DNA of 64,000 bases, from positions 62,001-126,000 of the IMG/VR virus record IMGVR_UViG_3300017963_000192; one strand, written 5' to 3'. Both the position numbers and the translations under genes were made by a program. Shown here piece by piece: positions 3,708 through 61,480 of this stretch. The notes under the pieces are model-generated. The model searched no databases, was not told the origin of the DNA, and was given only the letters and a program-made list of their open reading frames with translations. The stretch's first letter is position 1. Each line of letters starts with the position of its first letter.

Positions 3708-3709
3708 TA

Positions 3710-4486
3710 TTATTCTCCTTTATAAAAATAACTTTCATAATCTTTTAGATTTAAACCAGATTTGATATATAAAGTATTTTTATCTTTTCTATATTTTGCA
3801 AGATTTTGGCCTAAAACTTTTAAACCTTCTCTTCTTTGTGTGCATTTCCAATGAAAATATGTTGCATCATTTTCTAGATCACCACCACCTTGATGATCGC
3901 CTATCTCAAGATTAGCCATATATGCAAATCTTTTGCCAATTCTTTTAACTCTCTGACAATAATCATAATCTTCTTCACTATAAAGACCATAATCTTCACA
4001 CCAATATCCAATCTGTTCTCTAGTCCTTTCAGGAATTAAAACACAAGCCCCACCAATATTACCTTCTCTAACTCGAACATCACAACCATTTATCTGACAA
4101 ACATCAGGGTTCCACCCTTCAAAACTATAACCAATTATTGCAATGTCTGGAGCATTCTCTATTAATTCAACCATTGGAGTTAACCAGCAACCTGAATTAA
4201 ATATAATATCATTATCATATTTCATATAATATTTAAAATTTTCTGTTTGCCAGGCAAGATTAGATGCTTTAGCTATCCCAATATTTTCTCTTAATAAAAT
4301 TAGATTTTTAATTTTTCCATTTTTATATATATCTTTTAAATAGTCCTGGGTTCCATCTTGACTGTTATTATCCACAACTGTTAGTGTATATGGATATTTA
4401 GTATGAGTAAGAATCGATTCTATTGAATTTTTTGTAAAACCTATTCTATTAAATGTAACCATACAAATATTTACTTTATCTTCCAT
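3710..4486 (-). CDS. Glycosyltransferase family 2
   Basis: NICMVTFNR, VVDNNSQDGT, KYDND, EEDYDY motifs. Confidence 0.85.
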   Translation of the reverse strand: MEDKVNICMVTFNRIGFTKNSIESILTHTKYPYTLTVVDNNSQDGTQDYLKDIYKNGKIKNLILLRENIGIAKASNLAWQTENFKYYMKYDNDIIFNSGCWLTPMVELIENAPDIAIIGYSFEGWNPDVCQINGCDVRVREGNIGGACVLIPERTREQIGYWCEDYGLYSEEDYDYCQRVKRIGKRFAYMANLEIGDHQGGGDLENDATYFHWKCTQRREGLKVLGQNLAKYRKDKNTLYIKSGLNLKDYESYFYKGE

Positions 4487-4499
4487 TAAACGCTCCCAA

Positions 4500-5567
4500 T
4501 TAAAATAACTTCTTTCTCCAAGTAATAGGTATTTTAGGACTATCTATCTCAAAGTCTTTAACGTATTCAAACTTCCTCGGTCCCTTTTTCTTAAAATAAT
4601 CCCACATCTCTTCAATAGCATCTTCAATTTTTGTATTATTTTTAAAACCAGTAATACGTTCTGCTTTATCGTGATTACAATACGCTTTAAAAACCTCACC
4701 TGGTCTTTTATCTACATAAATAGGATCTTTATCATAACCAGTAACTTTTCTTACTATATTATACCAATCAGTTATTGATTTATAAACATCTCCACCTATA
4801 TTAATAACTTGACCATATGTTTTTTTATTAAATAAACTTTCACATATAATAGGATTAAAATCGTTTACCCAACTAATTGCTCTTGTTTGATTACCATCTC
4901 CATATATGTAACAATCTTTATTCATTAATATAAGATTAAGCCAAATTGCTAAAAAATTTCTATATACTGAAGTATATTGATTTGGTGCAAAACAATTGTG
5001 AGGACAAAATATCGTATATGTAAAATCATATATTTTATTAAATGCTGTTATTAAGTTTTCTGTTGAAACTTTTGATACAGCATATGGATCTTGAGGAGAT
5101 GGAATATATGACTCTAAAAAAGGTACGGGTTGTTGTAATATCACATTATTATTGCCGTCTTTTACAATACCATCACCATATCTACTCATAGAAGTAAAGA
5201 AAACAAAATGTTTTATGTTATGTTTTAATGCACACGTTAACAAGTTTCTTGAGGCAACATCATTGCTGTTTGAATTTCTTATTGGTGTAAAATAGCTTCT
5301 TATCTCTTCTGCTGAAGCAGCAAGATGAACTATATATTCTATTCCAGACTTATTAAAATTTTTGTAAAAGTATTTTGATAATTTTTTATAATTGCTTAAA
5401 TCTAATTTTGTAAATTTACATTTATTGTTTATATTTTCTTTGTATCCACCACTCAAATCATCAACACCATATATATCAAATTCGCTCCCATAATTATCTA
5501 TTAAATAATTTGTGCAATGACTTCCCATCATTCCAGCAACACCAGTTACTAAAATATTTTTTTTCAT
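4500..5567 (-). CDS. NAD-dependent nucleotide-sugar epimerase/dehydratase (extended SDR)
   Basis: TGVAGMMG Rossmann motif, YAVSK catalytic YxxxK, IYGDGNQTR, RPGEV. Confidence 0.9.
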   Translation of the reverse strand: MKKNILVTGVAGMMGSHCTNYLIDNYGSEFDIYGVDDLSGGYKENINNKCKFTKLDLSNYKKLSKYFYKNFNKSGIEYIVHLAASAEEIRSYFTPIRNSNSNDVASRNLLTCALKHNIKHFVFFTSMSRYGDGIVKDGNNNVILQQPVPFLESYIPSPQDPYAVSKVSTENLITAFNKIYDFTYTIFCPHNCFAPNQYTSVYRNFLAIWLNLILMNKDCYIYGDGNQTRAISWVNDFNPIICESLFNKKTYGQVINIGGDVYKSITDWYNIVRKVTGYDKDPIYVDKRPGEVFKAYCNHDKAERITGFKNNTKIEDAIEEMWDYFKKKGPRKFEYVKDFEIDSPKIPITWRKKLF

Positions 5568-29956: not shown

Positions 29957-30721
29957 TTATATTTTAGACTTTTTAAATTCCTTTAATTTTTTCTTTTCTA
30001 TTAGAGAAATACAAGCATCAACTACGTCAGAATCATACAATTTCCCCTTATTTTTACGAATTTCTTTTATTGCTTTTTTAAATCCTAAAGAAGGTCGATA
30101 AGGTCTGTGAGAAGACATTGCTTCAAGGACATCGGCTACCGCTAAAATACGAGTCTCTATAAGTATTTCATCACCTTTTAAACCTCTAGGATAACCTGAA
30201 CCATCCATTCTTTCATGATGTTGATATACTATTTCAGCAACAGGCCAAGGAAAATCTATTTCTTTTAATATTTTGTATCCTTTTAAAGGGTGTATTTTGA
30301 TTAAATCAAACTCTGTATCAGACAAGTCAGTTGGTTTAGATAAAATATCTGAAGGTAATCCTAATTTACCAATATCATGGACTGCTGCCGCTATTCTTAT
30401 TCCCTCAAGCATTCCATCTCTATTTTTAATTCCCATTTCCTCTCCAATATTTCTTGCAATATCAGCTACTTTTGATTGATGTCCAGCAGTATAAGGGTCA
30501 CGCATTTCGACAGCAGTAGCCATAGCTTGAACAACTCCAGAAAGGGCTTTCCTGAGTTTTTCTGGTATTTTTGTTTCTAATTCTATTTTTATGACTTCTT
30601 GTTTATTTTTTATGACGTGTTCGATTATTCTATAACCATTTTCTCTTAGAATGAATTTTAAATGTTCGTCTACAATAATACTATCTTTATCTATATAAAT
30701 ACCTTTATTGATATGTTTCAT
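29957..30721 (-). CDS. HD-GYP cyclic dinucleotide phosphodiesterase
   Basis: RDPYTAGH, HDIGK, HHERMDGSGYPRGLKGDEI, AVADVLEAMSSHRPYR all intact. Confidence 0.92.
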   Translation of the reverse strand: MKHINKGIYIDKDSIIVDEHLKFILRENGYRIIEHVIKNKQEVIKIELETKIPEKLRKALSGVVQAMATAVEMRDPYTAGHQSKVADIARNIGEEMGIKNRDGMLEGIRIAAAVHDIGKLGLPSDILSKPTDLSDTEFDLIKIHPLKGYKILKEIDFPWPVAEIVYQHHERMDGSGYPRGLKGDEILIETRILAVADVLEAMSSHRPYRPSLGFKKAIKEIRKNKGKLYDSDVVDACISLIEKKKLKEFKKSKI

Positions 30722-31124: not shown

Positions 31125-31436
31125 CTACTTCCACAAAAGTTTTAATAAGGCAAATGACACGATTATTACTGTTTGTACTACAATAAAAATCGTTACTATT
31201 TGCGTTTTAAACTTTTGAAGTTCTTTATTAGATTTTTCCAATTCTTCAACTCGATGTCTTAACCCGTTTTTGCCGTCAACACCCATAAGGACAACCTCAA
31301 TTGTTTTCATACGATCAAGCATTTCTCCAACTAGTTTGGAATTTTCTTTTTGGTTGTCGTTAAGTTCCTGGAGTTCTTTTAACACTAAATCTCTGTAAGC
31401 TTTTTCGACATCTGATTTACTATATTCGTTTGACAT
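31125..31436 (-). CDS. Coiled-coil protein with a C-terminal TM helix
   Basis: GVDGKNGL coiled coil followed by the hydrophobic IVTIFIVVQTVIIVSFALL. Confidence 0.55.
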   Translation of the reverse strand: MSNEYSKSDVEKAYRDLVLKELQELNDNQKENSKLVGEMLDRMKTIEVVLMGVDGKNGLRHRVEELEKSNKELQKFKTQIVTIFIVVQTVIIVSFALLKLLWK

Positions 31437-31439
31437 TTT

Positions 31440-32279
31440 CTATTTCCTTTTCTTCCTTCTGTCTGTTCTTTTTGAATAATTTTTTGCACATGAAACATCT
31501 TTAATAAGAATTATAGCTATAAATTTTTGCTTATCGATTGTACATCCCCTTGTTCTTATCTCTAATAATTTGCAAATATTATCCTTGTTGCAGAACTCGA
31601 CATCAAAAGATCTTCTTTCTCCTTTATCTATTGCGGATATAATGCTTTTACAGCCTTCTTCCGTTACACCAATATCATTAAGATGTACTCCAACCATATC
31701 ATTGATATTCTCACATTCTGCTATATTACAAAAACTGGGATTAACATCTTCTATAATCAAATCTTGAGAACAAATTGCAATGCCTTCAGTAGTTAATTCA
31801 ACCAAACGTTTATACCGATTTTGACTAATTCTTAATTGTTCAACTGTCTCTTTTTTAGAAGTAACATTACGTTGCATACCTCTAAATCCTATTATTCTGT
31901 TGTCATTAGAGTTTTTTAAAACATCAACAGATGTTTCGACCCATATTTTAATTCCATCTTTTCTTATAACTTGCCAATCAGTAATTTCATTTTTTTCTTC
32001 AGTTTCATAAACTTTACTAAATTCTTTATAAATTTTTTCTGCTGTTTTTTCGTCTGTATATTCTTTATAATTCATTCCAAAAAGTTCGTGTCTTGAATAT
32101 CCATACATTTCACAAAGAGCACGATTAAAAAAAGTTAAATTACCTTCTAAATCAACTTCATAGTATCCCTCATCAATACTCTCTAAAATGTTTTCATATT
32201 TATCTTTTGACTCTTCCAACCTTCTTTCTAATTTATTAAGTTGTGTTGTTATTTGTTCTATTTCATTTAAGTATGTCAT
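31440..32279 (-). CDS. PAS-PAS sensor protein without an output domain
   Basis: YENILESIDEGYYEVDLEGNLTFFN...RKDG.KIWVE...RNVT.KK; second PAS from YKRLVELTTEGI. Confidence 0.88.
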   Translation of the reverse strand: MTYLNEIEQITTQLNKLERRLEESKDKYENILESIDEGYYEVDLEGNLTFFNRALCEMYGYSRHELFGMNYKEYTDEKTAEKIYKEFSKVYETEEKNEITDWQVIRKDGIKIWVETSVDVLKNSNDNRIIGFRGMQRNVTSKKETVEQLRISQNRYKRLVELTTEGIAICSQDLIIEDVNPSFCNIAECENINDMVGVHLNDIGVTEEGCKSIISAIDKGERRSFDVEFCNKDNICKLLEIRTRGCTIDKQKFIAIILIKDVSCAKNYSKRTDRRKKRK

Positions 32280-32293
32280 TTTATATATCCTAT

Positions 32294-32587
32294 CTACATT
32301 AATTTAAAAAACTTATCAAATGAACTGATTTTTAATAAATCAAACAAACCTTTATTTATATTTATCAAAGACACTTCTTTATCAAAAGATTTTTGTTTTT
32401 TTACCAATGCTACTAAAACACCTAATCCAGAAGAGTCCATACATTTAACATTTATCATATCCACAATTATATCTCTATCATTAGGAATTTCTGTTAATAA
32501 TTCTTTTTTGATTTTCACAATATTTTCTATACATAACGCATCTTCTACCACTATTATATATTTATCGTTTTCTATTTTTATTTCCAT
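32294..32587 (-). CDS. STAS anti-sigma factor antagonist (start trimmed to ATG 32587)
   Basis: IIVDMINVKCMDSSGLGVLV, SpoIIAA/RsbV-type motif. Confidence 0.88.
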   Translation of the reverse strand: MEIKIENDKYIIVVEDALCIENIVKIKKELLTEIPNDRDIIVDMINVKCMDSSGLGVLVALVKKQKSFDKEVSLININKGLFDLLKISSFDKFFKLM

Positions 32588-32795
32588 TTTTTGATTTCCT
32601 TTTTTCTTCTGTTGAAGAAAGTTCTTCTTGATAAGCAAAAGAATTTATAAGTTGTTCGTTTGTTAGCTTACCTTGTTTTATTAATATAAAACCCAACAAA
32701 CCTCCTTCGTGTCTTTGAATGTTAAGAGCTGTACTAACATCCTCCCTTGATACATATCTAAGTTTTATTAAAATTTCCCCAACTTTTTTATTCAT
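32562..32795 (-). CDS. Stand-alone MshEN-like c-di-GMP-binding protein (start trimmed to ATG 32795)
   Basis: KVGEILIKLRYVSREDVSTALNIQ...LLGFILIKQGKLTNEQL matches the tandem RLGxxL motif; AAGGA RBS. Confidence 0.75.
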   Translation of the reverse strand: MNKKVGEILIKLRYVSREDVSTALNIQRHEGGLLGFILIKQGKLTNEQLINSFAYQEELSSTEEKRKSKNGNKNRKR

Positions 32796-32805
32796 TATTT
32801 TTTCC

Positions 32806-33393
32806 TTACTTACCATTATTATCAAAATCATTCAGATAATTAATCGCATCTTCATATTCATCATACACTTTAAATAGGTTATACACGCTTAATCTTTTTG
32901 CAATTTCATATGATCTCCCTCTAAAACCATAAAAGGCGAGAGATCTATTACATTTTTTAAAATGTTCTGAAAGATGTATAAATACACCTACTCCAGATGA
33001 ATCGAATAAACTTAATTTGGAGCAATCTAGTATTGCATGTAAAGTTGTTTCGTATTTATTACAAATTATTTTATATGTTTCGAGAATGTTTTTTAAAGTA
33101 TTAGGGGTATTGTATATTGTAAGTTCTTTGAAATTTAATTTAATATTTAGAATGTTGTTTATTTTATCAAAAGAAATTGAATTGTCTAAAGAAACATCTC
33201 TTTTTTCTTTTTTATAAGGTTCACTTAATCTTTCAAGCCAATCACATGGTTTGTTAGAATTATTAATGCTATCAATCCCATCATTAGTGAAAGCATTAAA
33301 AAAATTAGGGTGTCTTTCCCAATCATATTTATGTTCGGAAACCAGGTTGTTATTCTCAAATTTATTTTCGAGTAAAGTTTTTTCATACTTCAT
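32806..33393 (-). CDS. STAS domain protein with an N-terminal extension
   Basis: AILDCSKLSLFDSSGVGVFI. Confidence 0.8.
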   Translation of the reverse strand: MKYEKTLLENKFENNNLVSEHKYDWERHPNFFNAFTNDGIDSINNSNKPCDWLERLSEPYKKEKRDVSLDNSISFDKINNILNIKLNFKELTIYNTPNTLKNILETYKIICNKYETTLHAILDCSKLSLFDSSGVGVFIHLSEHFKKCNRSLAFYGFRGRSYEIAKRLSVYNLFKVYDEYEDAINYLNDFDNNGK

Positions 33394-33397
33394 TACT

Positions 33398-33949
33398 TTA
33401 ATCTCCCGAATTTATCTCAATTATATTTAATCTTTCACAATCAAAAAAATTAAAAGGAGCCACTTCTGCTGAAACTATGTCGGGAAACAGATAAACACCT
33501 CCGTCTATATAACTATTAACAACAAGTTCTGTACAAACAACCGCTTTTTTATCGGCATCTCCAACTCTTTTTAATTTAAATAGATATTTTATTAATAATA
33601 ATAACAACTGTTTATATGAATAATGTTCTCCTTCTCTTTTTACAGCAGATTCAAGTATTTTTCTATGTATTTCATCATTCATCCCTTTGTATCGTGCTAT
33701 ATATAAAAGTACATCCTCTTTTTTGTATTCTTGTAGTTGTTTAATCACAACTCCAATGAAAGTTGCTTCTATCGTAATCCCGTTTCCTAAATATATTAAT
33801 GCATGCGAGGCTTTGTATTTTGATTTAATTTTTTTAAAAAAGGTTTCTTGGAAATATACAATAAATCTGCTTATTATGTTTTTCTTTTTGTATATTAATA
33901 ATATATCGCTATCTTTCAATAATTCTTTATATTGTAAATACTCGCTCAT
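33398..33949 (-). CDS. Permuted papain-like NlpC/P60 (YiiX/YebB-like) enzyme
   Basis: ASHALIY (His) before VVCTELV (Cys), with a YSY motif: the permuted order. Confidence 0.75.
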   Translation of the reverse strand: MSEYLQYKELLKDSDILLIYKKKNIISRFIVYFQETFFKKIKSKYKASHALIYLGNGITIEATFIGVVIKQLQEYKKEDVLLYIARYKGMNDEIHRKILESAVKREGEHYSYKQLLLLLIKYLFKLKRVGDADKKAVVCTELVVNSYIDGGVYLFPDIVSAEVAPFNFFDCERLNIIEINSGD

Positions 33950-34030: not shown

Positions 34031-34774
34031 TCATTTAAATGTTCTCACATAAAATTCTAATTCAGCATTTATATCTTTATCATGCAATACTCTTAATCTA
34101 ACTTGATTTGCATATGGATTTTCAGAATAATATTTAACATATTTAGGAGGAGCTTCAATTTCATAATGCTGATTTTGATACCATAATCGTTTGTGTTTTA
34201 CAAATGTCCAATTTCCTCCGTATGCCGGTGGAATGTTTGGAGCCATTATAACATATACTTCTATTGGAAATTCTCCTGCTGATGAACTTATAAGTTGTAT
34301 CCCACCTCCATCTAAGTAATAGCTAAAACTTGGCGTTATAGTAATTTCTGTTACTCCTGTACTTGTTCCCAAGTGTGTTGTTCCTGTTGATGTAGTAATA
34401 GTAACATTCTCTCCCGTATCTTCTCCATAATCAAGACTGTCGGTATCTCCAGTAGTGAAATATATAAAAGTCATTGCGAGAGTGCCTTCAACTGGTCTTG
34501 GTTTTGTTTTAGGAATGCCAGTCTCAGGTTCAATGGGAGCTATTGTTTGATTAGAAGTATCTTTATAGTTTGTTTCAAAATCGATTAAACCAGTAGAGGT
34601 ATCAATACTGTTAAGATGGCATTCATATCTAAGGTTTCCGTCTGTTACAAATATTTCATAGTACTTGTCAGAGTTTTCGGTTTCCTGCCTAAAATTGTAC
34701 TGTACTTTGTTCAGTATTGATTTTGTAGTACAAATAGCAATGAATTCATCATATTCCATTAATTCTTTATACAT
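34031..34774 (-). CDS. Hypothetical virion protein
   Basis: Thr-rich, D(F/Y)ExNY motif shared with neighbours, coupled stops/starts. Confidence 0.55.
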   Translation of the reverse strand: MYKELMEYDEFIAICTTKSILNKVQYNFRQETENSDKYYEIFVTDGNLRYECHLNSIDTSTGLIDFETNYKDTSNQTIAPIEPETGIPKTKPRPVEGTLAMTFIYFTTGDTDSLDYGEDTGENVTITTSTGTTHLGTSTGVTEITITPSFSYYLDGGGIQLISSSAGEFPIEVYVIMAPNIPPAYGGNWTFVKHKRLWYQNQHYEIEAPPKYVKYYSENPYANQVRLRVLHDKDINAELEFYVRTFK

Positions 34775-35424
34775 TATTTCTTCTCCACATAACTAAGAAC
34801 ATACCCTTTAGCAGTTAAATCACCAGTACCATTTCTTCTCTGTTGAAGAATTCTAATTCTACTACCTTTTTGATAATTTAAATCTAGATAAAGTGTTGAT
34901 ATGTTGTTGACATAGCTAAAATCTATATCTTTCATTGTGATACCGTCATCATCTACAATAACTTTCTTTAGGGAATTTAAAGGAGCTTGAAGAGCAACTT
35001 CATCATCAATTTTTACTCTTATTTTCTCAAGATTATCACATTTATACACAAACTCAGAGAACCATTTTTTCTCCGACCCAAAATCTATGTCATAAAATTC
35101 TGTCCAACCATCATCAGTACATTCGTGTGTAACATCTCCACTAGTAGAATCATATTCCCTTCTAAATCTATCTGATCTAAAAACATTATCTTTTATTTGG
35201 TTGTTGGCATTGGATGTATAATTAGCTTCATAGTCAATTACACTTGAAGCATGGCGCACTTCGTCTATGTAACATATATATAATAGATGTTCTCCATCTG
35301 GAGCAAACAAGGTATAATATTTAGCTCCTCCAGTAGATGTTATTATATGCTGATATTGAAGATTCTTTGTTTCAGAATCTAATACATGAGACTTATATTC
35401 AGTATATGTTAATTTAAGTTCCAT
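34774..35424 (-). CDS. Hypothetical virion protein
   Basis: N-terminus paralogous to 34031-34774 (DYEANY). Confidence 0.55.
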   Translation of the reverse strand: MELKLTYTEYKSHVLDSETKNLQYQHIITSTGGAKYYTLFAPDGEHLLYICYIDEVRHASSVIDYEANYTSNANNQIKDNVFRSDRFRREYDSTSGDVTHECTDDGWTEFYDIDFGSEKKWFSEFVYKCDNLEKIRVKIDDEVALQAPLNSLKKVIVDDDGITMKDIDFSYVNNISTLYLDLNYQKGSRIRILQQRRNGTGDLTAKGYVLSYVEKK

Positions 35425-37988
35425 CAGTAAACTTCCCTAAATGATAATGATGCGTGCATCGTTGATGATGTTCCTAACGACTTTCCTACTAAAACCAGGA
35501 TATCTCTATCTCCAGAATAATTAGACACAAGTTTTAAAAGCATTTCTGGTACTTCGCTTGCTAACTGATTTCTATCAGCACCTTGACTAGATACAAACAT
35601 ATCTTCTATTTCTTCTCCACCGCTATACGCAGATGCTGTTATATCATATTCAGCAATTGAATTTGTACCAGCAGATACCCAGGATGCTCCAGTAAGTGTC
35701 GCTCCATGAATAAGTTTAACATGAACCAATGTATTTGATTCATTGTATGTTTTAAAGGTTAATGGTAATATTTGTGCTCGTTTATACGTTTCTTTCAATC
35801 GTAAAGCGATAATAGGTACATACGTTGCTCCAACAACACGGTCAGCGGCACCTGTCGTAACACTCCTTGTAACACCTTTGGGGTTATACCCTCCCTCACT
35901 CTCAATTTCAACACATACGTTATCCATATATGTATTACTTGCTGTAGAAGATGTATTTTCTATTTCATATCGTAGTGGTAGATTAGCTGTCTGCATATAA
36001 ACTTTATCTATAATATTAGCATGTAGAAATTGGTGGATATAGTAGAATTCTCCATCTATACTAAATCCCATACGAACACGTCCCATACCTAACCACTGAA
36101 TGTCCAATATAAATATTTGACCTTTAGATACATCTACTGTAATAGCACTTTTACCAGTACCATCTAAAGTATCTATATTCCAGTCATCTTGTTGTACTTT
36201 ATTTTCTACAACAGAGCCAGTAGTATAGCTCCTTTCTACTACATACAAACCGCCAGTAGATGTTTGTTCAAAAAATACACCATTATAATCATCAAAGTAT
36301 CCAATTCTTTTTACAACACCAGCTTTTTCAGACCCCATTATTCCTGTCATGGCAATTCTGAGAGAATTATGTTCATAAAATGATGTTAAATACGTATTAC
36401 CATCAGGTACACCTATAGCAACAGTCCATTGATATCCAATAATTTCTATAGACTCAACGATATCCCATCTTAAACTATCTTGTATATTTTTAAATAAATA
36501 TTTGAATTTAGTACTTTCTTTTCTATTTTTAATTTTATTATAGACTTTTTCTACATCTTCTTCTTTTCCGTAAATTCCAATCTCTTTATAGAATAATTCT
36601 ATATCTTTTTTTGAATGTAATGATAGTATATAAGCTCTGCTACATTCTTTACCATTACATTTAGGAATTTTTGAATGTATGTTTCCATGTATTCCAAACT
36701 TTAGTAAAAGTTCCTTTATATCTTTCACGAGTTGTTCTGAAATAGAACAATACCCAATCTCATCTTTAAACGCCCATCCATCAGTAGAATACAATCGAGA
36801 AAGAAACGTAGTTATAATTTCTTTTGGAGATTCAAATATATCATTTGGAATAAATTTATATGCGGAAGATTTCCCCAATAATTCAACTTTTCGTAAAAGT
36901 TTAGTAATTCCATTTTTTCCCTTTCTACTTCCATTTTTATAAACTACATGATAAGAATTACTATCGCCTTTCTTCTTTTTCAACACACAATCATATTGTC
37001 CTACTAAAGACTCAAATTCGTCTAATTGGCTTCCTTTGTTTTGACTAAATGTTACATGATGTGCAGATATTCCACCATCTCCTATAAGATAAGCTAAAAT
37101 TTTAGCATCTGATTCTGTTAAATTATTATTAGTTCCAAAAATTGGTAATGTATCAGCTATAGCAACAAAATCTCCTATTTTAATATTTTCAAGATTAGTC
37201 CATTCCTTAATATTGAAGTGTGGTTTATTTCCTTTTTTCCAAAAAGTTTTATAATATTTTTTTCCTACCCACAGTGGATGTTGAGCATTACCACATAATT
37301 CATTTCCAGATTTAGTTTTTATTTTATATATAGGTTCATAAGCATTCCATTCTGCTATAGCATCTACTTCTATTCTTTTTCCATCTCTAACAGTTAAAAG
37401 TTTAAACTCTGTATCAACTAAATCTTTAGCTTGTATTCTTCTACCATCAGCCAATGGTATATAATCAGAAGCTAATCTGCATTTACCTGGCTGATAATTA
37501 AAATACTCTTTAGTTTGTCGGATTACTTTATCACCATTTGCAGTTGTACATTCCAATCTTGTAGAAGCCTCGTTACTTCGATAAGTAGCTGTTCCTCCAC
37601 CAGTAAGTACGTTATTCCAAAATAATGGTTGGTCATTAAAAATTTGTGTTGAATCAAATAATGAATGAGGATTGCCAGTTCTTAATCGTGAGAAAGCATC
37701 AAGGTTAAAACTATCTGAAAACGTGGTTGTAACAGATATAGCACTATCCACACCCCTAGATGCTCCATCAGCATAATTATTTATATAGTCATCATAATCA
37801 GCAGTGCCATATTTTATTATTGTATAATAAGTAAATTCGTTAGATTGCCTTACACGAACAGTAAGATCGCTAACATCACTTTTAAGAGCGTGGTCGTATC
37901 CAAATTTAGGATTTGCATCTATTATAGCTTTTAAATCTAACCATTTTGGTATTTCTATCGATTGTACTATACTTCCTGACGCTGCCAT
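35424..37988 (-). CDS. Probable virion protein (lectin-like beta fold) interrupted by an intein (about 482 aa after splicing)
   Basis: Splicing gives FNYQPGK|SLRIAMTG; DAFSRLR, QWLGMGRVRMG, NLPLRYEI motifs seen in phage virion proteins. Confidence 0.65.
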   Translation of the reverse strand: MAASGSIVQSIEIPKWLDLKAIIDANPKFGYDHALKSDVSDLTVRVRQSNEFTYYTIIKYGTADYDDYINNYADGASRGVDSAISVTTTFSDSFNLDAFSRLRTGNPHSLFDSTQIFNDQPLFWNNVLTGGGTATYRSNEASTRLECTTANGDKVIRQTKEYFNYQPGKCRLASDYIPLADGRRIQAKDLVDTEFKLLTVRDGKRIEVDAIAEWNAYEPIYKIKTKSGNELCGNAQHPLWVGKKYYKTFWKKGNKPHFNIKEWTNLENIKIGDFVAIADTLPIFGTNNNLTESDAKILAYLIGDGGISAHHVTFSQNKGSQLDEFESLVGQYDCVLKKKKGDSNSYHVVYKNGSRKGKNGITKLLRKVELLGKSSAYKFIPNDIFESPKEIITTFLSRLYSTDGWAFKDEIGYCSISEQLVKDIKELLLKFGIHGNIHSKIPKCNGKECSRAYILSLHSKKDIELFYKEIGIYGKEEDVEKVYNKIKNRKESTKFKYLFKNIQDSLRWDIVESIEIIGYQWTVAIGVPDGNTYLTSFYEHNSLRIAMTGIMGSEKAGVVKRIGYFDDYNGVFFEQTSTGGLYVVERSYTTGSVVENKVQQDDWNIDTLDGTGKSAITVDVSKGQIFILDIQWLGMGRVRMGFSIDGEFYYIHQFLHANIIDKVYMQTANLPLRYEIENTSSTASNTYMDNVCVEIESEGGYNPKGVTRSVTTGAADRVVGATYVPIIALRLKETYKRAQILPLTFKTYNESNTLVHVKLIHGATLTGASWVSAGTNSIAEYDITASAYSGGEEIEDMFVSSQGADRNQLASEVPEMLLKLVSNYSGDRDILVLVGKSLGTSSTMHASLSFREVY
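36366..37481 (-). mobile_element. Intein (372 aa) with LAGLIDADG homing endonuclease
   Basis: Starts CRLASDYIPLADG, block B NAQHPL, ILAYLIGDGG and FLSRLYSTDG, ends YEHN with Ser at +1. Confidence 0.9.
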
Positions 37989-49044: not shown

Positions 49045-49344
49045 TCATAAACCTTTATCGCATTTTTTACGACAAAGTTTGATACAAAGATTTTTTGTAT
49101 TGATTTCTTTTGTTTCTAGCATATTTGCATCATCAACAGATTTGACTTTATGAAGAATTTCCCAACTGAAGTTATCTTCACCATACTTAGCTATAGCTTT
49201 GTGTATGTAACTGTGATTTCTAGATGTCTTTTTTCTAGCTAAATGGTTATGTTGCACTCTCCTTTTGTTTAATGATAGTGATGTTTTGCCTATGTAACAT
49301 TTTCCATTAATTATATTTGTTGCCTTATATACTAAATAACTCAT
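49045..49344 (-). pseudogene. Truncated GIY-YIG endonuclease (catalytic domain only)
   Basis: MSYLVYKATNIINGKCYIGKT...AIAKYG...WEIL, then an early stop with no DNA-binding tail. Confidence 0.6.
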
Positions 49345-49360
49345 TAAGTTTTCCATGTAT

Positions 49361-49849
49361 CTAGAAATAATTGCTTCTACCATAATCATCTTTAAGTCTA
49401 ACTATATCGTTTTCATCATTCTCATCTCCATCTTCTACTCCTAATGCAACGTCCAATATCATTCCATATTTTTTATTCCCATTATAAATTGCTCTGTGTA
49501 CAACATGTTTTTTAAATCCAAAAATGTCTCCTTTTTTTGCTTTTATTGTAATTAAATTATTATTTAAAAATTCCTCAAGTAATTTAAATTTAGGTTCTAC
49601 ATCTGGCATATTAAGTATTTTTTTAGAAACAGGCTTTTTGCTATACTTTATTATAAAATCATTATCTAATATTAAATATAACTGATATCTTTTAAAATGA
49701 AATTGGAGAGATAATGATTGCTTCGGTTTTACATATAATACTTTTGTTGTACTTTTAACATTATCAGCATATAATCCATAGTGCCCCCACGGTCTTTCTA
49801 CTTCTAATGTTGAAAATGGTTTAATGAATTTATTTCTCTTTAATTTCAT
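49361..49849 (-). CDS. Mannose-6-phosphate isomerase type II-like cupin
   Basis: VERPWG, VKPKQSLSLQFH, DIVRLKDDYGR, as in the C-terminal domain of ManC/AlgA. Confidence 0.8.
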   Translation of the reverse strand: MKLKRNKFIKPFSTLEVERPWGHYGLYADNVKSTTKVLYVKPKQSLSLQFHFKRYQLYLILDNDFIIKYSKKPVSKKILNMPDVEPKFKLLEEFLNNNLITIKAKKGDIFGFKKHVVHRAIYNGNKKYGMILDVALGVEDGDENDENDIVRLKDDYGRSNYF

Positions 49850-49864
49850 CTTTTTCTCACCTCC

Positions 49865-50221
49865 CTAGCACATGTTATTCCATCTTCTGACTGCATCAAT
49901 TTCTTCTTCTGTCTTTGGACCACTTGCCTTACAAGTTTCGCATTTAACTTGTTTATATTTAGTATCATGATATACATATATAAGAACATGTGTTGATTTA
50001 CAATATGGACAAGGTTTTAAATTCAAGTCTATATCCCAAAACATAATATCTTCAGTATAGGGGATAAAACAGGATGTACTACCATGTCTCCCTACATATC
50101 TGTATATCCATCCACTAGGAACTCTTATAAACGTTCCTTCATAATTATTCTTTTTTTGGATGTTTACTGACTCTCCAATTTTCATTTTAAATAATCTTTT
50201 TGCTAATTTATTTTCTTTCAT
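49865..50221 (-). CDS. Protein with a C-terminal Lar-like (restriction alleviation) Zn finger
   Basis: LKPCPYC...CETCKASGP...AVRRWN. Confidence 0.65.
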   Translation of the reverse strand: MKENKLAKRLFKMKIGESVNIQKKNNYEGTFIRVPSGWIYRYVGRHGSTSCFIPYTEDIMFWDIDLNLKPCPYCKSTHVLIYVYHDTKYKQVKCETCKASGPKTEEEIDAVRRWNNMC

Positions 50222-50571
50222 ATCTCTTTTTTAAGACTTTCTAAAGCCTCCTCCAAATTATCGTGTATGTCTATTAATTTATCAAAATTAGTAATAGCCA
50301 ACACTTGTTTACATAGTTCGTTTGGGTTGAACACTTTAAAGGCTAATCCCTCCTTATCTAGTTTTCTTTTATTTATAATAAACACTTTTAATGCAGAACT
50401 ACCTATGAATTCCACATCTTCAAGATCAACCAAAATATTGGCTTTTTTATGTTTTTTCATAATTTCTTCAAGAACATTCTCAAAACTGTCCGATAAATCT
50501 AAATCCATTTTTCCAGACAATTCTACAACAATGATGTTTTCCTCTACTTCTTGATATTCTACACTACCCAT
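50218..50571 (-). CDS. STAS anti-sigma factor antagonist
   Basis: LSGKMD, ILVDLEDVEFIGSSAL. Confidence 0.88.
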   Translation of the reverse strand: MGSVEYQEVEENIIVVELSGKMDLDLSDSFENVLEEIMKKHKKANILVDLEDVEFIGSSALKVFIINKRKLDKEGLAFKVFNPNELCKQVLAITNFDKLIDIHDNLEEALESLKKEI

Positions 50572-51303: not shown

Positions 51304-51657
51304 TTATTTCTCCTTTGATTTAATAAATTCTACCGCCTCTTCTTCATTATTACAAACTTTTATAACCTCATCAATACCTGTAATGTTAAACACTTTTTTA
51401 CAAGTAGCATTTGCATCAAATAATACAAGTTTCAGCTTATTGCAAATCAATTCTTTATATGCAATTATAAAAACTTTTATAGCATAACTATTTAAATATC
51501 CTACATCGAATAAATCCATTAGTATGTGACAATTAGGATTATCTTCTATAGCCTCATTTACCATATCTTCAAAGTCTTTATCTAATGTTATATCAATATT
51601 TCCAGATGGTGTCAATATAATTATATCGTCTCCTATCTTTTTATATGCTGATTTCAT
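51304..51657 (-). CDS. STAS anti-sigma factor antagonist
   Basis: PSGNID, ILMDLFDVGYLNSYAI. Confidence 0.85.
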   Translation of the reverse strand: MKSAYKKIGDDIIILTPSGNIDITLDKDFEDMVNEAIEDNPNCHILMDLFDVGYLNSYAIKVFIIAYKELICNKLKLVLFDANATCKKVFNITGIDEVIKVCNNEEEAVEFIKSKEK

Positions 51658-52725: not shown

Positions 52726-53898
52726 TTAAACTCTAAAAAGAGTAAGATGTATAATCTTGTTATTAAATTCAACAGCTTCACCGATTAATTTGGTAGAACT
52801 CTTGTCTTTTTCATCTTTCTCTTCCCTAAATTCAATTATCTTGTAAGGCTGCCCTTGAGCCTCACCATAGATAACCTTCTCCTTAAACTTCTTCAAAAGT
52901 TCCTTTCCCAGAAGCCCTTTAACTTTTTTAGGATTAAACTCAAACAAGTTGTTTTCTTCTTTTTTCATAAAAGAACTGCCCTCTTTCTCAACAACATCGT
53001 CCTTAACAGACTGCCAAGAATCTGGAAGATTATAAATATCCATACCCTTAACTTTGTTTTCTGTGATAAAGATAGCTCCAACTTGGTTTTCGATAGGTGG
53101 GATTTTCTTCATAGCTTCTCTAATGCTTGAAGACAAATCATCTAATGTTGCTGCTAAATCATCAGATGCCGGAACGTCTCTTGTAGGCTCATCTGGTTCT
53201 GATGAAAGTGAATCCATACTTGCAAACATCATATCTACTCCATTATCAATACTGTCATTAAGATTGACAGATGAAGATGTAGTAAATGTACTAGATGCTT
53301 CTGATGTAACACCACTAGTTTCATCAGACACATTAGATGCATATACATTTTGACTTTCTACACCACGACTTTTTAAACCACTTTTCTTGGTTAATCGCCT
53401 ATTGCTCAGTTTAACTTGAGCATTTTGTGGTTCTCCATACACAGAACAGCTATAAAGATTAACACTATTCCAGGTACTGCCTTGATTAGAAAGATCAATA
53501 TCATATGGGGTTCTACCACCATATTTCATATCTGCTCCTTTTTGTATCCCTTTGCTTTGGTGAATACATCTAACAGCAACTCGCTGCCCTTTTCCAGCCA
53601 ATACAATGTGACCGTGAATAGCAGCCCTTTCTTGAGTTTTACCTCTGAAGATTTCACCTCTACTGATAAGTAGAGGTACATCCTCATTGTTTTTGACATA
53701 AACGTAGTCGATCATACCTGTGTCTTCTACTTTTACATCCTGTGCTTCTGCAAACGTGATATAATCACGTTTCTCGTCAACTTCCCTTTTAACAGGTACG
53801 ATGACGTTTAGAGATTCTTCACTCATTCTCCAAGGCTCGTCTAGAACGAATCCATCCTTTTCCTCTATGACAGCCCCAATAAATTTTTGAATCTTCAT
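52726..53898 (-). CDS. ARPP-1 / DUF6569-like protein
   Basis: VKNNEDVPLLISRGEIFRGKTQERA...VAVRCIH; AAGGAGG RBS. Confidence 0.6.
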   Translation of the reverse strand: MKIQKFIGAVIEEKDGFVLDEPWRMSEESLNVIVPVKREVDEKRDYITFAEAQDVKVEDTGMIDYVYVKNNEDVPLLISRGEIFRGKTQERAAIHGHIVLAGKGQRVAVRCIHQSKGIQKGADMKYGGRTPYDIDLSNQGSTWNSVNLYSCSVYGEPQNAQVKLSNRRLTKKSGLKSRGVESQNVYASNVSDETSGVTSEASSTFTTSSSVNLNDSIDNGVDMMFASMDSLSSEPDEPTRDVPASDDLAATLDDLSSSIREAMKKIPPIENQVGAIFITENKVKGMDIYNLPDSWQSVKDDVVEKEGSSFMKKEENNLFEFNPKKVKGLLGKELLKKFKEKVIYGEAQGQPYKIIEFREEKDEKDKSSTKLIGEAVEFNNKIIHLTLFRV

Positions 53899-61373: not shown

Positions 61374-61400
61374 GATATTTTTTTATTGGTTTATAAAATT

Positions 61401-61472
61401 CGTCCCTGACAGGAATCGAACCTGCTATACATAGTTTTAGAGACTATTGCCTAGCCATTTGGCTTCAGGGAC
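61401..61472 (-). tRNA. tRNA with anticodon CUA (amber suppressor-type), no encoded CCA
   Basis: GTCCCTG AA GCC AAATGGCTA GGC A ATAGT CTCTAAA ACTAT GTATA GCAGG TTCGATT CCTGT CAGGGAC G: full cloverleaf. Confidence 0.92.
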
Positions 61473-61480
61473 GAGTAACT

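What the first reader, a model, noticed from the sequence alone, without database searches (positions are those of the whole stretch)
32562..32795. Stand-alone 77-aa MshEN-like domain: possible c-di-GMP sponge
Seen: two tandem copies of the RLGxxLxxxGxI/LxxxxL pattern (KVGEILIKLRYVSREDVSTAL and LLGFILIKQGKLTNEQL) with no attached ATPase or output domain. Established: MshEN is a high-affinity c-di-GMP receptor, normally fused to pilus or T2SS ATPases. Inference: a nucleotide sponge or a dominant-negative regulator of pilus assembly (superinfection exclusion). The leading Arg residues are substituted, so binding is uncertain.
Basis: partly seen in the sequence, partly recalled or inferred. Interest (0 to 1): 0.6.

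Follow-up and report, generated by a model that had tools for sequence, protein, structure and literature searches.

The report
Phage-encoded minimal c-di-GMP receptor (mini-MshEN)
A jumbo phage carries a 77-residue gene that is just the c-di-GMP-binding core of the bacterial MshEN domain, with the residue pattern of the tightest known binder, inside a phage signalling operon that also has a c-di-GMP-degrading enzyme, so the phage probably reads or removes this host second messenger.

Summary
Window 32565..32795 (-), stop 32562-32564, encodes a 77-aa protein. Residues 4-56 are two 24-residue MshEN motifs joined by a 5-residue spacer. It passes NCBIfam NF053729 (E 5.5e-13, above cut-off), although Pfam MshEN does not match. 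The AlphaFold2 model superposes on c-di-GMP-bound MshE and Thermus PilF GSPII-B at 0.7-0.9 A.

K at motif I and L at motif II is the pattern of PilF GSPII-B (KD 6 nM). Isolated 57-63-residue N-subdomains also bind on their own. The one real deviation is Arg13 at the helix-turn glycine.

The gene lies in a tight operon: STAS, mini-MshEN, STAS, PAS, coiled-coil/TM, REC, HD-GYP. The 218-kb phage record has no pilus/T2SS ATPase, GGDEF, PilZ, STAS kinase or STAS phosphatase. In a related phage the same slot holds a two-CW sensor domain.

My best reading is a c-di-GMP-sensing subunit of a phage STAS/HD-GYP module (0.4). A plain sponge comes second (0.25). Ligand binding and all partners are untested. 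Stand-alone mini-MshEN proteins also occur in bacteria and apparently in other phages, all uncharacterised.

The parts
32565..32795 (-). CDS of the 77-aa stand-alone MshEN_N-type protein (P0001); the TAA stop is at 32562-32564
   Evidence: ORF, RBS; NF053729 E 5.5e-13; same gene call in metagenome assemblies
32715..32786 (-). Motif I, residues K4-Q27 (KVGEILIKLRYVSREDVSTALNIQ). K4 is the stacking residue, V5-G6 is the backbone H-bond element, V20/L24 belong to the hydrophobic triad and Q27 is conserved. R13 replaces the turn Gly.
   Evidence: direct reading against the motif in PMC5013675 and PMC11731258; residue frequencies
32700..32714 (-). 5-residue spacer R28-G32 (RHEGG)
   Evidence: direct reading; the spacer length is as defined in PMC5013675
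32628..32699 (-). Motif II, residues L33-Q56 (LLGFILIKQGKLTNEQLINSFAYQ). L33 is the stacking residue, followed by L34-G35, turn G42, L49/F53 and Q56.
   Evidence: direct reading
32565..32627 (-). C-terminal tail, residues 57-77, acidic then strongly basic (EELSSTEEKRKSKNGNKNRKR). It is modelled as a continuation of helix 4 at lower confidence. Its last 8 codons overlap the start of the next gene.
32806..33393 (-). Upstream gene: 195-aa protein with an N-terminal extension of unknown function and a C-terminal STAS domain (DSSGVG motif). Its stop is 10 nt before the mini-MshEN start.
32294..32587 (-). Downstream gene: 97-aa STAS protein of anti-sigma-antagonist type (DSSGLG motif). Its ATG lies 26 nt inside the mini-MshEN ORF, which suggests translational coupling.
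31440..32279 (-). 279-aa PAS-domain sensor protein
31125..31436 (-). 103-aa coiled-coil protein with a C-terminal hydrophobic segment; a counterpart is present in the related phage L021
30737..31117 (-). 126-aa receiver (REC)-like protein; its Pfam score is just under the cut-off
29957..30721 (-). 254-aa HD-GYP protein (predicted c-di-GMP phosphodiesterase) with the HD, HHE and GYP motifs intact; the only one in the phage record
   Evidence: (HD_5 E 1.4e-40)
33398..33949 (-). 183-aa YaeF-family permuted papain-like protein at the head of the gene string; also present in the L021 cassette

Best explanation
The gene encodes a natural minimal MshEN_N (GSPII N-subdomain) four-helix bundle that binds one c-di-GMP molecule with sub-micromolar, possibly nanomolar, affinity. 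Proposed binding mode: the guanines stack on K4 and L33 on one face. On the other face they stack on the V5/V20/L24 and L34/L49/F53 hydrophobic clusters. The backbone amides of G6 and G35 contact the guanine Hoogsteen edges, and Q27 and Q56 complete the site. The protein has no output domain. I propose it is the c-di-GMP-sensing subunit of a phage signalling operon (STAS, mini-MshEN, STAS, PAS, coiled-coil/TM, REC, HD-GYP). Ligand loading would change its contacts with one or both flanking STAS proteins. This would couple the host c-di-GMP level, which the phage HD-GYP lowers, to a STAS partner switch acting on host targets. Shown here: the gene, the motif, the fold and the operon context. Inferred from characterised homologues: ligand binding. 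Inferred from gene order and one comparator phage: partnership with STAS. Unknown: the output.
For: Domain identity rests on NF053729 above cut-off, PDB sequence hits to PilF and MshE, an AF2 model with core pLDDT 94-95 and four helices, and Foldseek top hits 5htl and the PilF GSPII-B c-di-GMP complexes at rmsd 0.7-0.9 A over 53-54 columns with probability 1.00. Binding competence is supported by the K4/L33 pair, which reproduces K167/L196 of PilF GSPII-B (KD 6 nM; the K167L variant binds at 2 nM). Isolated N-subdomains bind alone: PilF159-221 at 54 nM and MshEN without its C-subdomain at 350 nM. Only 3 residues precede motif I, so there is no extended N-capped helix of the kind that blocks binding in PilF GSPII-A. 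R at the turn position occurs in 11% of 234 related core domains. The context is seven or eight same-strand genes with gaps of 3-15 nt or overlaps, including a 26-nt overlap with the STAS gene and an intact HD-GYP in the same string. The phage has 5 STAS genes but no STAS kinase or phosphatase, so their targets must be host proteins. In the related phage contig L021 (same 31% GC, HD-GYP 69% identical) the slot between the N-extended STAS and the next STAS holds a stand-alone two-CW sensor domain instead. MshEN_N-like modules also occur as N-terminal input domains of histidine kinases, cyclases and sugar transferases.
Against: No ligand binding was measured. No characterised binder has Arg at the motif-I turn glycine, which falls outside the relaxed motif [GAS] of PMC5013675. 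The frequencies come from hits selected by similarity to the query. The STAS partnership rests on gene order and one sequenced comparator, plus one contig known by gene sizes only. The complex prediction gave no verdict. No STAS-MshEN fusion was seen among 112 relatives. No MshEN gene lies near HD-GYP genes in the 160 metagenome and bacterial-genome loci examined. Only identical copies of the gene were found, so there is no test of selection. Promoter and terminator scans were no better than chance, so the operon is inferred from spacing alone.
Confidence: 0.4

Rival explanations
1. Sponge or buffer. The protein has no partner and simply sequesters free c-di-GMP. It would complement the catalytic HD-GYP, so that host c-di-GMP drops quickly after infection. 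The benefit could be a reset of host physiology (motility, pili, exopolysaccharide, biofilm) or the blunting of a c-di-GMP-signalling defence.
For: It is a minimal ligand-binding core without an output domain. It has the K/L signature linked to nanomolar affinity. It is co-encoded with a c-di-GMP phosphodiesterase. The phage has no GGDEF or PilZ, so it only removes or reads the messenger. Phages are known to pair nucleotide-cleaving enzymes with sponge proteins (introduction of bioRxiv 10.1101/2025.07.12.664507). Atlas and BFVD searches point to other small viral proteins of this type.
Against: Binding is 1:1, so a sponge would need high expression, yet the gene is embedded mid-operon and overlaps the next gene. 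The equivalent slot in L021 holds a Cys-rich two-CW domain, which is not a nucleotide sponge. A stoichiometric binder adds little next to an enzyme unless the enzyme is slow. No oligomer or multi-site architecture of the kind seen in known sponges is evident.
Confidence: 0.25
2. Degenerate, non-binding MshEN_N fold. It would serve as a structural adaptor or helical docking module for a neighbouring protein, as the non-binding GSPII-A domain of PilF or the XpsE N-domain do in their proteins.
For: Arg13 replaces the conserved turn glycine and Lys43 replaces a hydrophobic position of motif II (direct reading; for the motif). Small deviations are enough to abolish binding in PilF GSPII-A. Pfam MshEN gives no hit.
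Against: Every position shown to matter in mutagenesis is conserved or conservatively replaced: the position-3 Gly, the hydrophobic triad and both Gln. By helix topology (my inference), the turn lies at the end of the bundle opposite the ligand site. R or K at that turn occurs in 22% of related domains. The model matches ligand-bound structures at under 1 A. The N-terminus is short, which favours binding.
Confidence: 0.2
3. Decoy or dominant-negative regulator of a host type IV pilus or T2SS ATPase, mimicking its N-terminal domain to block pilus assembly and give superinfection exclusion.
For: It is homologous to the N-terminal domains of PilB, PilF, MshE and GspE.
Against: The nearest relatives are mostly not ATPases (1 of 112 carries T2SSE). 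The protein lacks the C-terminal subdomain of the full MshEN domain. No pilus-related gene lies nearby or anywhere in the phage record. The host is unknown. Nothing in the context points to pili.
Confidence: 0.05

Closest known systems
Thermus thermophilus PilF GSPII-B domain, N-terminal subdomain (PilF159-221; PDB 8pdk, 8pkz)
   Same: It has the same 24+5+24 core and the same four-helix bundle (rmsd 0.7-0.9 A, about 40% identity). It has the same Lys (motif I) and Leu (motif II) in place of the MshEN arginines. The isolated 63-residue piece folds and binds c-di-GMP at 54 nM.
   Different: PilF GSPII-B is an internal domain of an 889-aa pilus ATPase and has a C-terminal subdomain that adds a contact, giving 6 nM. 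The phage protein is a free-standing gene with a charged tail, has Arg instead of Gly at the motif-I turn, and its motif II is not shortened.
Vibrio cholerae MshE N-terminal domain (MshEN; PDB 5htl)
   Same: It is the founding member of the 53-residue c-di-GMP-binding motif. It is the best structural match (rmsd 0.8 A over 54 columns, 39% identity). The hydrophobic triads, the position-3 Gly and both Gln are all conserved.
   Different: MshEN uses Arg at both stacking positions (KD 0.5 uM). It carries a C-terminal subdomain and is fused to a T2SSE ATPase. Pfam PF05157, built on this full domain, does not match the phage protein.
Uncharacterised stand-alone MshEN_N proteins of bacteria and metagenomic viruses. 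Examples: P0239 (60 aa, beside rho/rpmE/lgt), P0209 (65 aa), an Atlas 71-aa bacterial cluster, Atlas viral clusters of 75 and 84 aa, and BFVD A0A516LYM6 (90 aa).
   Same: They are single-unit 53-residue cores with no other domain. Several have K/L or L/L at the stacking positions, and some have short basic tails. The viral clusters were found by language-model features and by fold.
   Different: Identity is 42% or less. None is characterised. P0239 is an isolated gene with no signalling neighbours. The viral clusters are leads only, because I could not retrieve their sequences or contexts. None is known to sit in a STAS/HD-GYP cassette.
NfrB-type c-di-GMP-activated glycosyltransferases (C-terminal MshEN domain)
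   Same: Residues 2-62 match the MshEN region of NF012033 and NF008411 (E 8e-9 and 1e-4). These proteins show that the module works as a portable c-di-GMP input (PMC8669469, listed).
   Different: There the domain is fused to its output enzyme. Here any output must be reached in trans.
Streptomyces RsiG, a c-di-GMP-armed anti-sigma factor (functional analogy recalled from my own knowledge, not tested here)
   Same: It is a small helical protein whose c-di-GMP loading controls a sigma/anti-sigma partner interaction. This is the kind of logic proposed here for mini-MshEN plus STAS.
   Different: The fold and binding motif are unrelated, no STAS domain is involved, and it is a cellular protein rather than a phage one.
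Phage nucleotide sponges (Tad1, Tad2, Acb2, Acb4)
   Same: They are small phage proteins that act purely by sequestering a host nucleotide signal.
   Different: Their folds are unrelated, they are typically oligomeric with several sites, and they target defence signals (gcADPR, cGAMP, cA3). I found no MshEN-type or c-di-GMP-dedicated phage sponge in the paper searches.

Membership tests
MshEN / GSPII c-di-GMP-binding domain (53-residue core, NCBIfam NF053729) | Two tandem 24-residue motifs separated by a 5-residue spacer | tested here: met
   K4-Q27, R28-G32, L33-Q56 by direct reading. NF053729 scores 48.5 bits against a cut-off of 38 and covers profile positions 2-53 of 53.
MshEN / GSPII c-di-GMP-binding domain (53-residue core, NCBIfam NF053729) | Compact four-helix bundle | tested here: met
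   The AF2 model has helices 5-11, 17-30, 34-40 and 46-75, with core pLDDT 94-95. Foldseek aligns it to 5htl and 8pdk at rmsd 0.7-0.9 A with probability 1.00.
MshEN / GSPII c-di-GMP-binding domain (53-residue core, NCBIfam NF053729) | Guanine-stacking residue R, K or L at position 1 of each motif | tested here: met
   K4 and L33 are identical to K167 and L196 of PilF GSPII-B; the extended consensus is (R/K/L)LG (PMC11731258).
MshEN / GSPII c-di-GMP-binding domain (53-residue core, NCBIfam NF053729) | Hydrophobic residue then Gly at positions 2-3, LxxxLxxQ at positions 17-24 (hydrophobic triads, backbone H-bonds, Gln) | tested here: met
   V5-G6, V20, L24 and Q27 in motif I; L34-G35, L49, F53 and Q56 in motif II. 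The substitutions V-for-L and F-for-L are conservative. Ile-for-Leu changes cost only 2.4-fold in PilF9-65.
MshEN / GSPII c-di-GMP-binding domain (53-residue core, NCBIfam NF053729) | Gly at position 10 of each motif (helix-helix turn) | tested here: inconclusive
   Motif II has G42. Motif I has R13, which lies outside the relaxed [GAS] of PMC5013675. R occurs at this position in 11% and K in 11% of 234 related domains. No characterised binder with R here is known to me.
MshEN / GSPII c-di-GMP-binding domain (53-residue core, NCBIfam NF053729) | Binds c-di-GMP specifically | not testable with these tools
   Needs ITC, DRaCALA or NMR with purified protein.
Full-length MshEN domain (Pfam PF05157, about 110-145 residues) as in MshE, PilB, GspE | C-terminal alpha/beta subdomain following the four-helix bundle | tested here: not met
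   The protein ends 21 residues after the core. There is no PF05157 hit at E<=1. Structural alignments cover only 53-57 columns of targets 137-146 residues long.
Full-length MshEN domain (Pfam PF05157, about 110-145 residues) as in MshE, PilB, GspE | Fusion to a T2SSE-type ATPase or other output domain | tested here: not met
   It is a stand-alone 77-aa ORF. PF00437 has no match in the phage record.
Phage nucleotide-sponge proteins (functional class) | Sequesters a host nucleotide signal and thereby changes host signalling or defence | not testable with these tools
   No sequence or fold relation to known sponges appeared. BFVD top hits other than the 90-aa protein A0A516LYM6 are insignificant.
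STAS partner-switching module (RsbV / SpoIIAA type), as the proposed partner system | STAS proteins with the phosphorylatable Ser motif (DSSG) | tested here: met
   STAS97 carries DSSGLG and STAS195 carries DSSGVG. PF01740 and TIGR00377 match both.
STAS partner-switching module (RsbV / SpoIIAA type), as the proposed partner system | Cognate anti-sigma kinase (HATPase_c_2) and PP2C phosphatase encoded with it | tested here: not met
   There are no PF13581, PF02518 or PF07228 matches in the 217,703-bp record, which is 88% complete. Any kinase or phosphatase would have to be the host's.

The most novel reading that the evidence does not exclude
The phage runs a two-part anti-c-di-GMP weapon: a nanomolar mini-MshEN sponge plus an HD-GYP hydrolase under PAS/REC/STAS control. 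Its purpose would be to erase host c-di-GMP, either to neutralise a c-di-GMP-signalling defence (bacterial TIR-STING CBASS uses c-di-GMP; this is my own knowledge and was not tested here) or to force the host out of a biofilm or pilus state. Mini-MshEN proteins would then be a new, widespread family of phage second-messenger sponges, represented by the viral Atlas clusters of 52 and 138 members.
Probability: 0.12. Interest if true: 0.85.

Novelty: new variant of a known kind. Interest (0 to 1): 0.6.

Why it matters
c-di-GMP is the main lifestyle switch of bacteria, yet phage manipulation of it is barely documented. This gene would be a natural version of the minimal c-di-GMP-binding module that structural biologists so far obtained only by truncating PilF and MshE. 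It carries the K/L signature proposed to predict nanomolar affinity. If it binds, three things follow. It extends the MshEN receptor family to phages. It offers a 6-9 kDa genetically encodable c-di-GMP sensor or sink. With its STAS, PAS, REC and HD-GYP neighbours, it points to phage-encoded signalling circuits that read and rewrite host second-messenger state. It also draws attention to an uncharacterised population of stand-alone mini-MshEN proteins in bacteria and viromes.

Tried and rejected
- **Family scans:** Pfam-A and PHROGs on the 77/89-aa protein gave no hit. Only NCBIfam recognises it.
- **Single-sequence word search:** it found only the protein itself.
- **Exact-peptide scans with P0001:** Viral contigs gave only an identical copy and genome contigs gave no relative.
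- **Profile scans of viral contigs (A1, A2):** I therefore did no sensitive census of IMG/VR.
- **tblastn of GenBank phages:** P0001 found one hit, a full-length GspE-type ATPase on a 63% GC 'UNVERIFIED Bacteriophage sp.' scaffold, probably bacterial. The consensus-like P0209 found nothing.
- **Search for a diverged orthologue through the HD-GYP gene:**
  - The 16-kb ENA contig with the syntenic cassette has no retrievable DNA.
  - L017 is too short.
  - L018, a 545-kb viral contig, and L014 have HD-GYP but no MshEN.
  - Of 80 metagenome loci, only L021 shares the cassette, and it has a two-CW protein in the slot.
- **Bacterial HD-GYP loci:** 80 loci (625 kb) have no MshEN-like ORF nearby.
- **Complex prediction (STAS195 + STAS97 + P0001):** no verdict, score 0.20 against a mark of 0.34. 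This is evidence neither for nor against binding.
- **Promoter and terminator scan:** counts were at chance level.
- **P0237 (61 aa):** rejected as a stand-alone example because it is the first piece of a split or frameshifted PilB-like gene.

Full report
**Where the window lies.** The window is bases 62001-126000 of a 217,703-bp IMG/VR virus record. CheckV estimates it as 88% complete and classes its ends as linear. GC content is 31%. All long ORFs around the finding are on the minus strand and include virion genes. One is a structural protein interrupted by a LAGLIDADG intein, and it resembles structural proteins of cyanomyoviruses and of phage HMO-2011. This is a jumbo phage of unknown host.

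**The observation.**
- The ORF runs from ATG 32795 to TAA 32564-32562 on the minus strand and encodes 77 aa (P0001).
- An AAGGAA ribosome-binding site lies 8 nt upstream and spans the stop of the preceding gene.
- The next gene's ATG (32587) lies 26 nt inside the ORF.
- Independent metagenome gene calls give the same 77-aa and 97-aa products.
- Residues K4-Q27 and L33-Q56 are two copies of the 24-residue MshEN motif, and R28-G32 is a 5-residue spacer. This is the 53-residue architecture defined from the MshE-c-di-GMP crystal structure (PMC5013675).

**Statistical support.**
- NCBIfam NF053729 ('c-di-GMP_motif, MshE-related') matches end to end at E 5.5e-13, 48.5 bits against a cut-off of 38.
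- It is the only such site in a six-frame scan of the phage record.
- phmmer against PDB sequences finds Thermus PilF (E 6.6e-14) and V. cholerae MshE (E 6.4e-5).
- Pfam's MshEN model, which includes the C-terminal subdomain, and PHROGs give nothing.

**Fold.** I built an alignment of P0001 with 89 core segments from the exhaustive search (A1). With it, AlphaFold2 gives a four-helix bundle: helices 5-11, 17-30, 34-40 and 46-75. The core pLDDT is 94-95 and the tail 63-70. [quoted passage not shown] All have probability 1.00. The E-values are modest only because the domain is small.

The literature reverses this concern.
- In Thermus PilF GSPII-B the same two positions are Lys167 and Leu196. In the alignment these correspond to K4 and L33.
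[quoted passage not shown] The K167R variant is weaker and K167L binds at 2 nM.
- The authors extend the consensus to (R/K/L)LG and propose that a hydrophobic first residue predicts very high affinity (PMC11731258).
- The positions that mutagenesis shows to matter are present here. These are the hydrophobic triads (V5/V20/L24 and L34/L49/F53), the position-3 glycines (G6, G35) and both glutamines (Q27, Q56).
- A stand-alone core is sufficient. PilF159-221 (63 residues) binds at 54 nM, and MshEN without its C-subdomain at 350 nM. An engineered PilF9-65 binds at about 0.7 uM.
- An extended, N-capped first helix blocks binding in the non-binding GSPII-A domain. The phage protein has only three residues before motif I.
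- The genuine deviation is Arg13 at the turn glycine of motif I, which lies outside the relaxed [GAS] class.
- Among 234 related core domains, this position is G in 60%, R in 11% and K in 11%. That sample was selected by similarity to the query.
- From the helix topology I infer that the turn sits at the end of the bundle opposite the ligand site.
- I put ligand binding at about 0.7-0.75.

**Relatives.**
- The exhaustive HMMER search of 1.84 billion representatives found 576 proteins at E<=1e-3. None is closer than 49% identity, and the best 150 are all 126 aa or longer.
- Of the 112 relatives of 480 aa or less, 95 match DUF4388/PatA_N-type repeats, 15 match full MshEN, 1 matches T2SSE and none matches STAS. 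The nearest kin are therefore mostly repeat-only proteins, not ATPases.
- A profile word search restricted to 42-135 aa found 609 short proteins.
- Some are true single-unit genes. One example is P0239 (60 aa), embedded between rpmE and lgt in a 169-kb bacterial contig.
- Others are fragments. P0237 is the first piece of a split PilB-like gene.
- In phages, GenBank tblastn found no stand-alone homologue.
- However, the ESM Atlas feature search returns two all-viral clusters of 84 aa (52 members, auto-named GspE N-terminal domain-containing) and 75 aa (138 members) at scores 0.90-0.91.
- BFVD contains one 90-aa viral protein with the same fold, A0A516LYM6 (TM 0.78, probability 1.00).
- These are leads that I could not inspect. 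They suggest the phage mini-MshEN is not a one-off.

**Context.**
- The gene sits in a tight same-strand string:
  - YaeF-like permuted papain protein, 183 aa
  - STAS with an N-terminal extension, 195 aa
  - mini-MshEN, 77 aa
  - STAS, 97 aa
  - PAS protein, 279 aa
  - coiled-coil/TM protein, 103 aa
  - REC-like protein, 126 aa
  - HD-GYP protein, 254 aa
- Gaps between these genes are 3-15 nt, or the genes overlap.
- The HD-GYP has intact HD, HHE and GYP motifs and is the only one in the record.
- The record encodes five STAS proteins. It has no GGDEF, PilZ, T2SSE ATPase, HATPase_c or HATPase_c_2 kinase, or SpoIIE/PP2C phosphatase.
- The phage can therefore degrade and (probably) bind c-di-GMP but cannot make it. 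Its STAS proteins would have to engage host partners.

**Comparator phage.**
- Contig L021 has 31.5% GC and an HD-GYP 69% identical. It shares structural, STAS and YaeF-like genes at 28-42% identity.
- It carries a rearranged version of the cassette.
- Between the N-extended STAS and the next STAS it has a 79-aa stand-alone two-CW domain protein (NF045718, 45.6 bits against a cut-off of 35) and a 55-aa Cys-containing ORF. It has no MshEN.
- A 16-kb ENA contig shows the same gene-size pattern (STAS151, 85 aa, 63 aa, STAS106, PAS, 82 aa, 42 aa, HD-GYP), but its DNA was not retrievable.
- The slot between the STAS genes therefore appears to hold exchangeable small sensor domains.
- In addition, Atlas structure matches show MshEN_N-like modules as N-terminal input domains of histidine kinases, REC-cyclases and sugar transferases.

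**Interpretation.**
- *Best reading (0.4).* The protein is a stand-alone, probably high-affinity c-di-GMP receptor. It serves as the ligand-sensing subunit of the phage STAS/PAS/REC/HD-GYP module.
- *Sponge (0.25).* A pure sponge that cooperates with the HD-GYP is the main rival. The minimal architecture and the K/L signature favour it. Its mid-operon coupling to STAS and the two-CW swap count against it.
- *Non-binding adaptor (0.2).* This cannot be excluded because of Arg13.
- *Pilus-ATPase decoy (0.05).* This idea has no contextual support.
- *Host.* The host is unknown. The nearest cellular HD-GYPs (57-63% identity) are in Syntrophaceae, Smithella and Desulfobacterales MAGs, and the related contigs come from JGI metagenomes.

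**Limits.**
- There is no biochemical evidence.
- Only identical copies of the gene were found, so there is no test of selection.
- There is one sequenced comparator cassette.
- The complex prediction gave no verdict.
- The profile census of IMG/VR could not be run.

Noticed in passing
window 61400..61473 (-): A tRNA with anticodon CTA (amber-suppressor type; ARAGORN labels it tRNA-Pyl). It may mean the jumbo phage recodes TAG in some genes. The genes discussed here end in TAA, so they are unaffected.
   Followed up: no
window 50218..50571 and 51304..51657 (-); G000:C1:10909-11190 (-): There are three more STAS-domain genes, making five in the phage record, with no cognate kinase or phosphatase. 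One (50218..50571) overlaps by 4 nt a downstream 118-aa protein with a Lar restriction-alleviation zinc-ribbon domain (49865..50221).
   Followed up: partly
window 35424..37988 (-): An 854-aa virion structural protein is interrupted by a LAGLIDADG-type intein. Homologues in cyanophages and in phage HMO-2011 align in two pieces around the insert.
   Followed up: no
window 52726..53898 (-), 49045..49389 (-): An ARPP-1 domain protein (PF20208, E 2e-24) and a SegE-like GIY-YIG homing endonuclease lie near the second STAS cluster.
   Followed up: no
window 34031..34774 and 34774..35424 (-): These are tandem paralogues (247 and 216 aa) of unknown function just upstream of the signalling operon. One L021 protein matches both, at 42% and 35% identity.
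   Followed up: no
L021:3022-3261 (+) and L021:3239-3406 (+): A related phage has a stand-alone two-CW domain protein (79 aa) and a 55-aa Cys-containing ORF between its STAS genes, in the slot that mini-MshEN occupies in the window. The same contig also has a calcineurin-like phosphoesterase and a third STAS gene.
   Followed up: partly
L014:342-2567 (+); L018:10001-10546 (+): Other viral contigs carry HD-GYP genes. One is a 741-aa multi-PAS-HD-GYP fusion beside portal, protease and capsid genes on an 11.7-kb contig. Another is an HD-GYP (58% identity to P0274) on a 545-kb viral contig. Neither has an MshEN-like ORF within reach.
   Followed up: partly
L099:1497-3200 (+): A PilB/GspE-type ATPase gene appears split into 61-aa, 107-aa and 413-aa ORFs next to ftsZ. 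This is either frameshift errors or a genuinely split gene. It shows that some 'stand-alone' short MshEN hits are fragments.
   Followed up: no
L102 (MT836441.1:244-6402), ORF 2896-4680 (+): A scaffold labelled 'UNVERIFIED Bacteriophage sp.' from a faecal virome carries a full-length GspE/PilB-like ATPase with an N-terminal MshEN domain at 63% GC. It is probably bacterial DNA rather than phage.
   Followed up: partly
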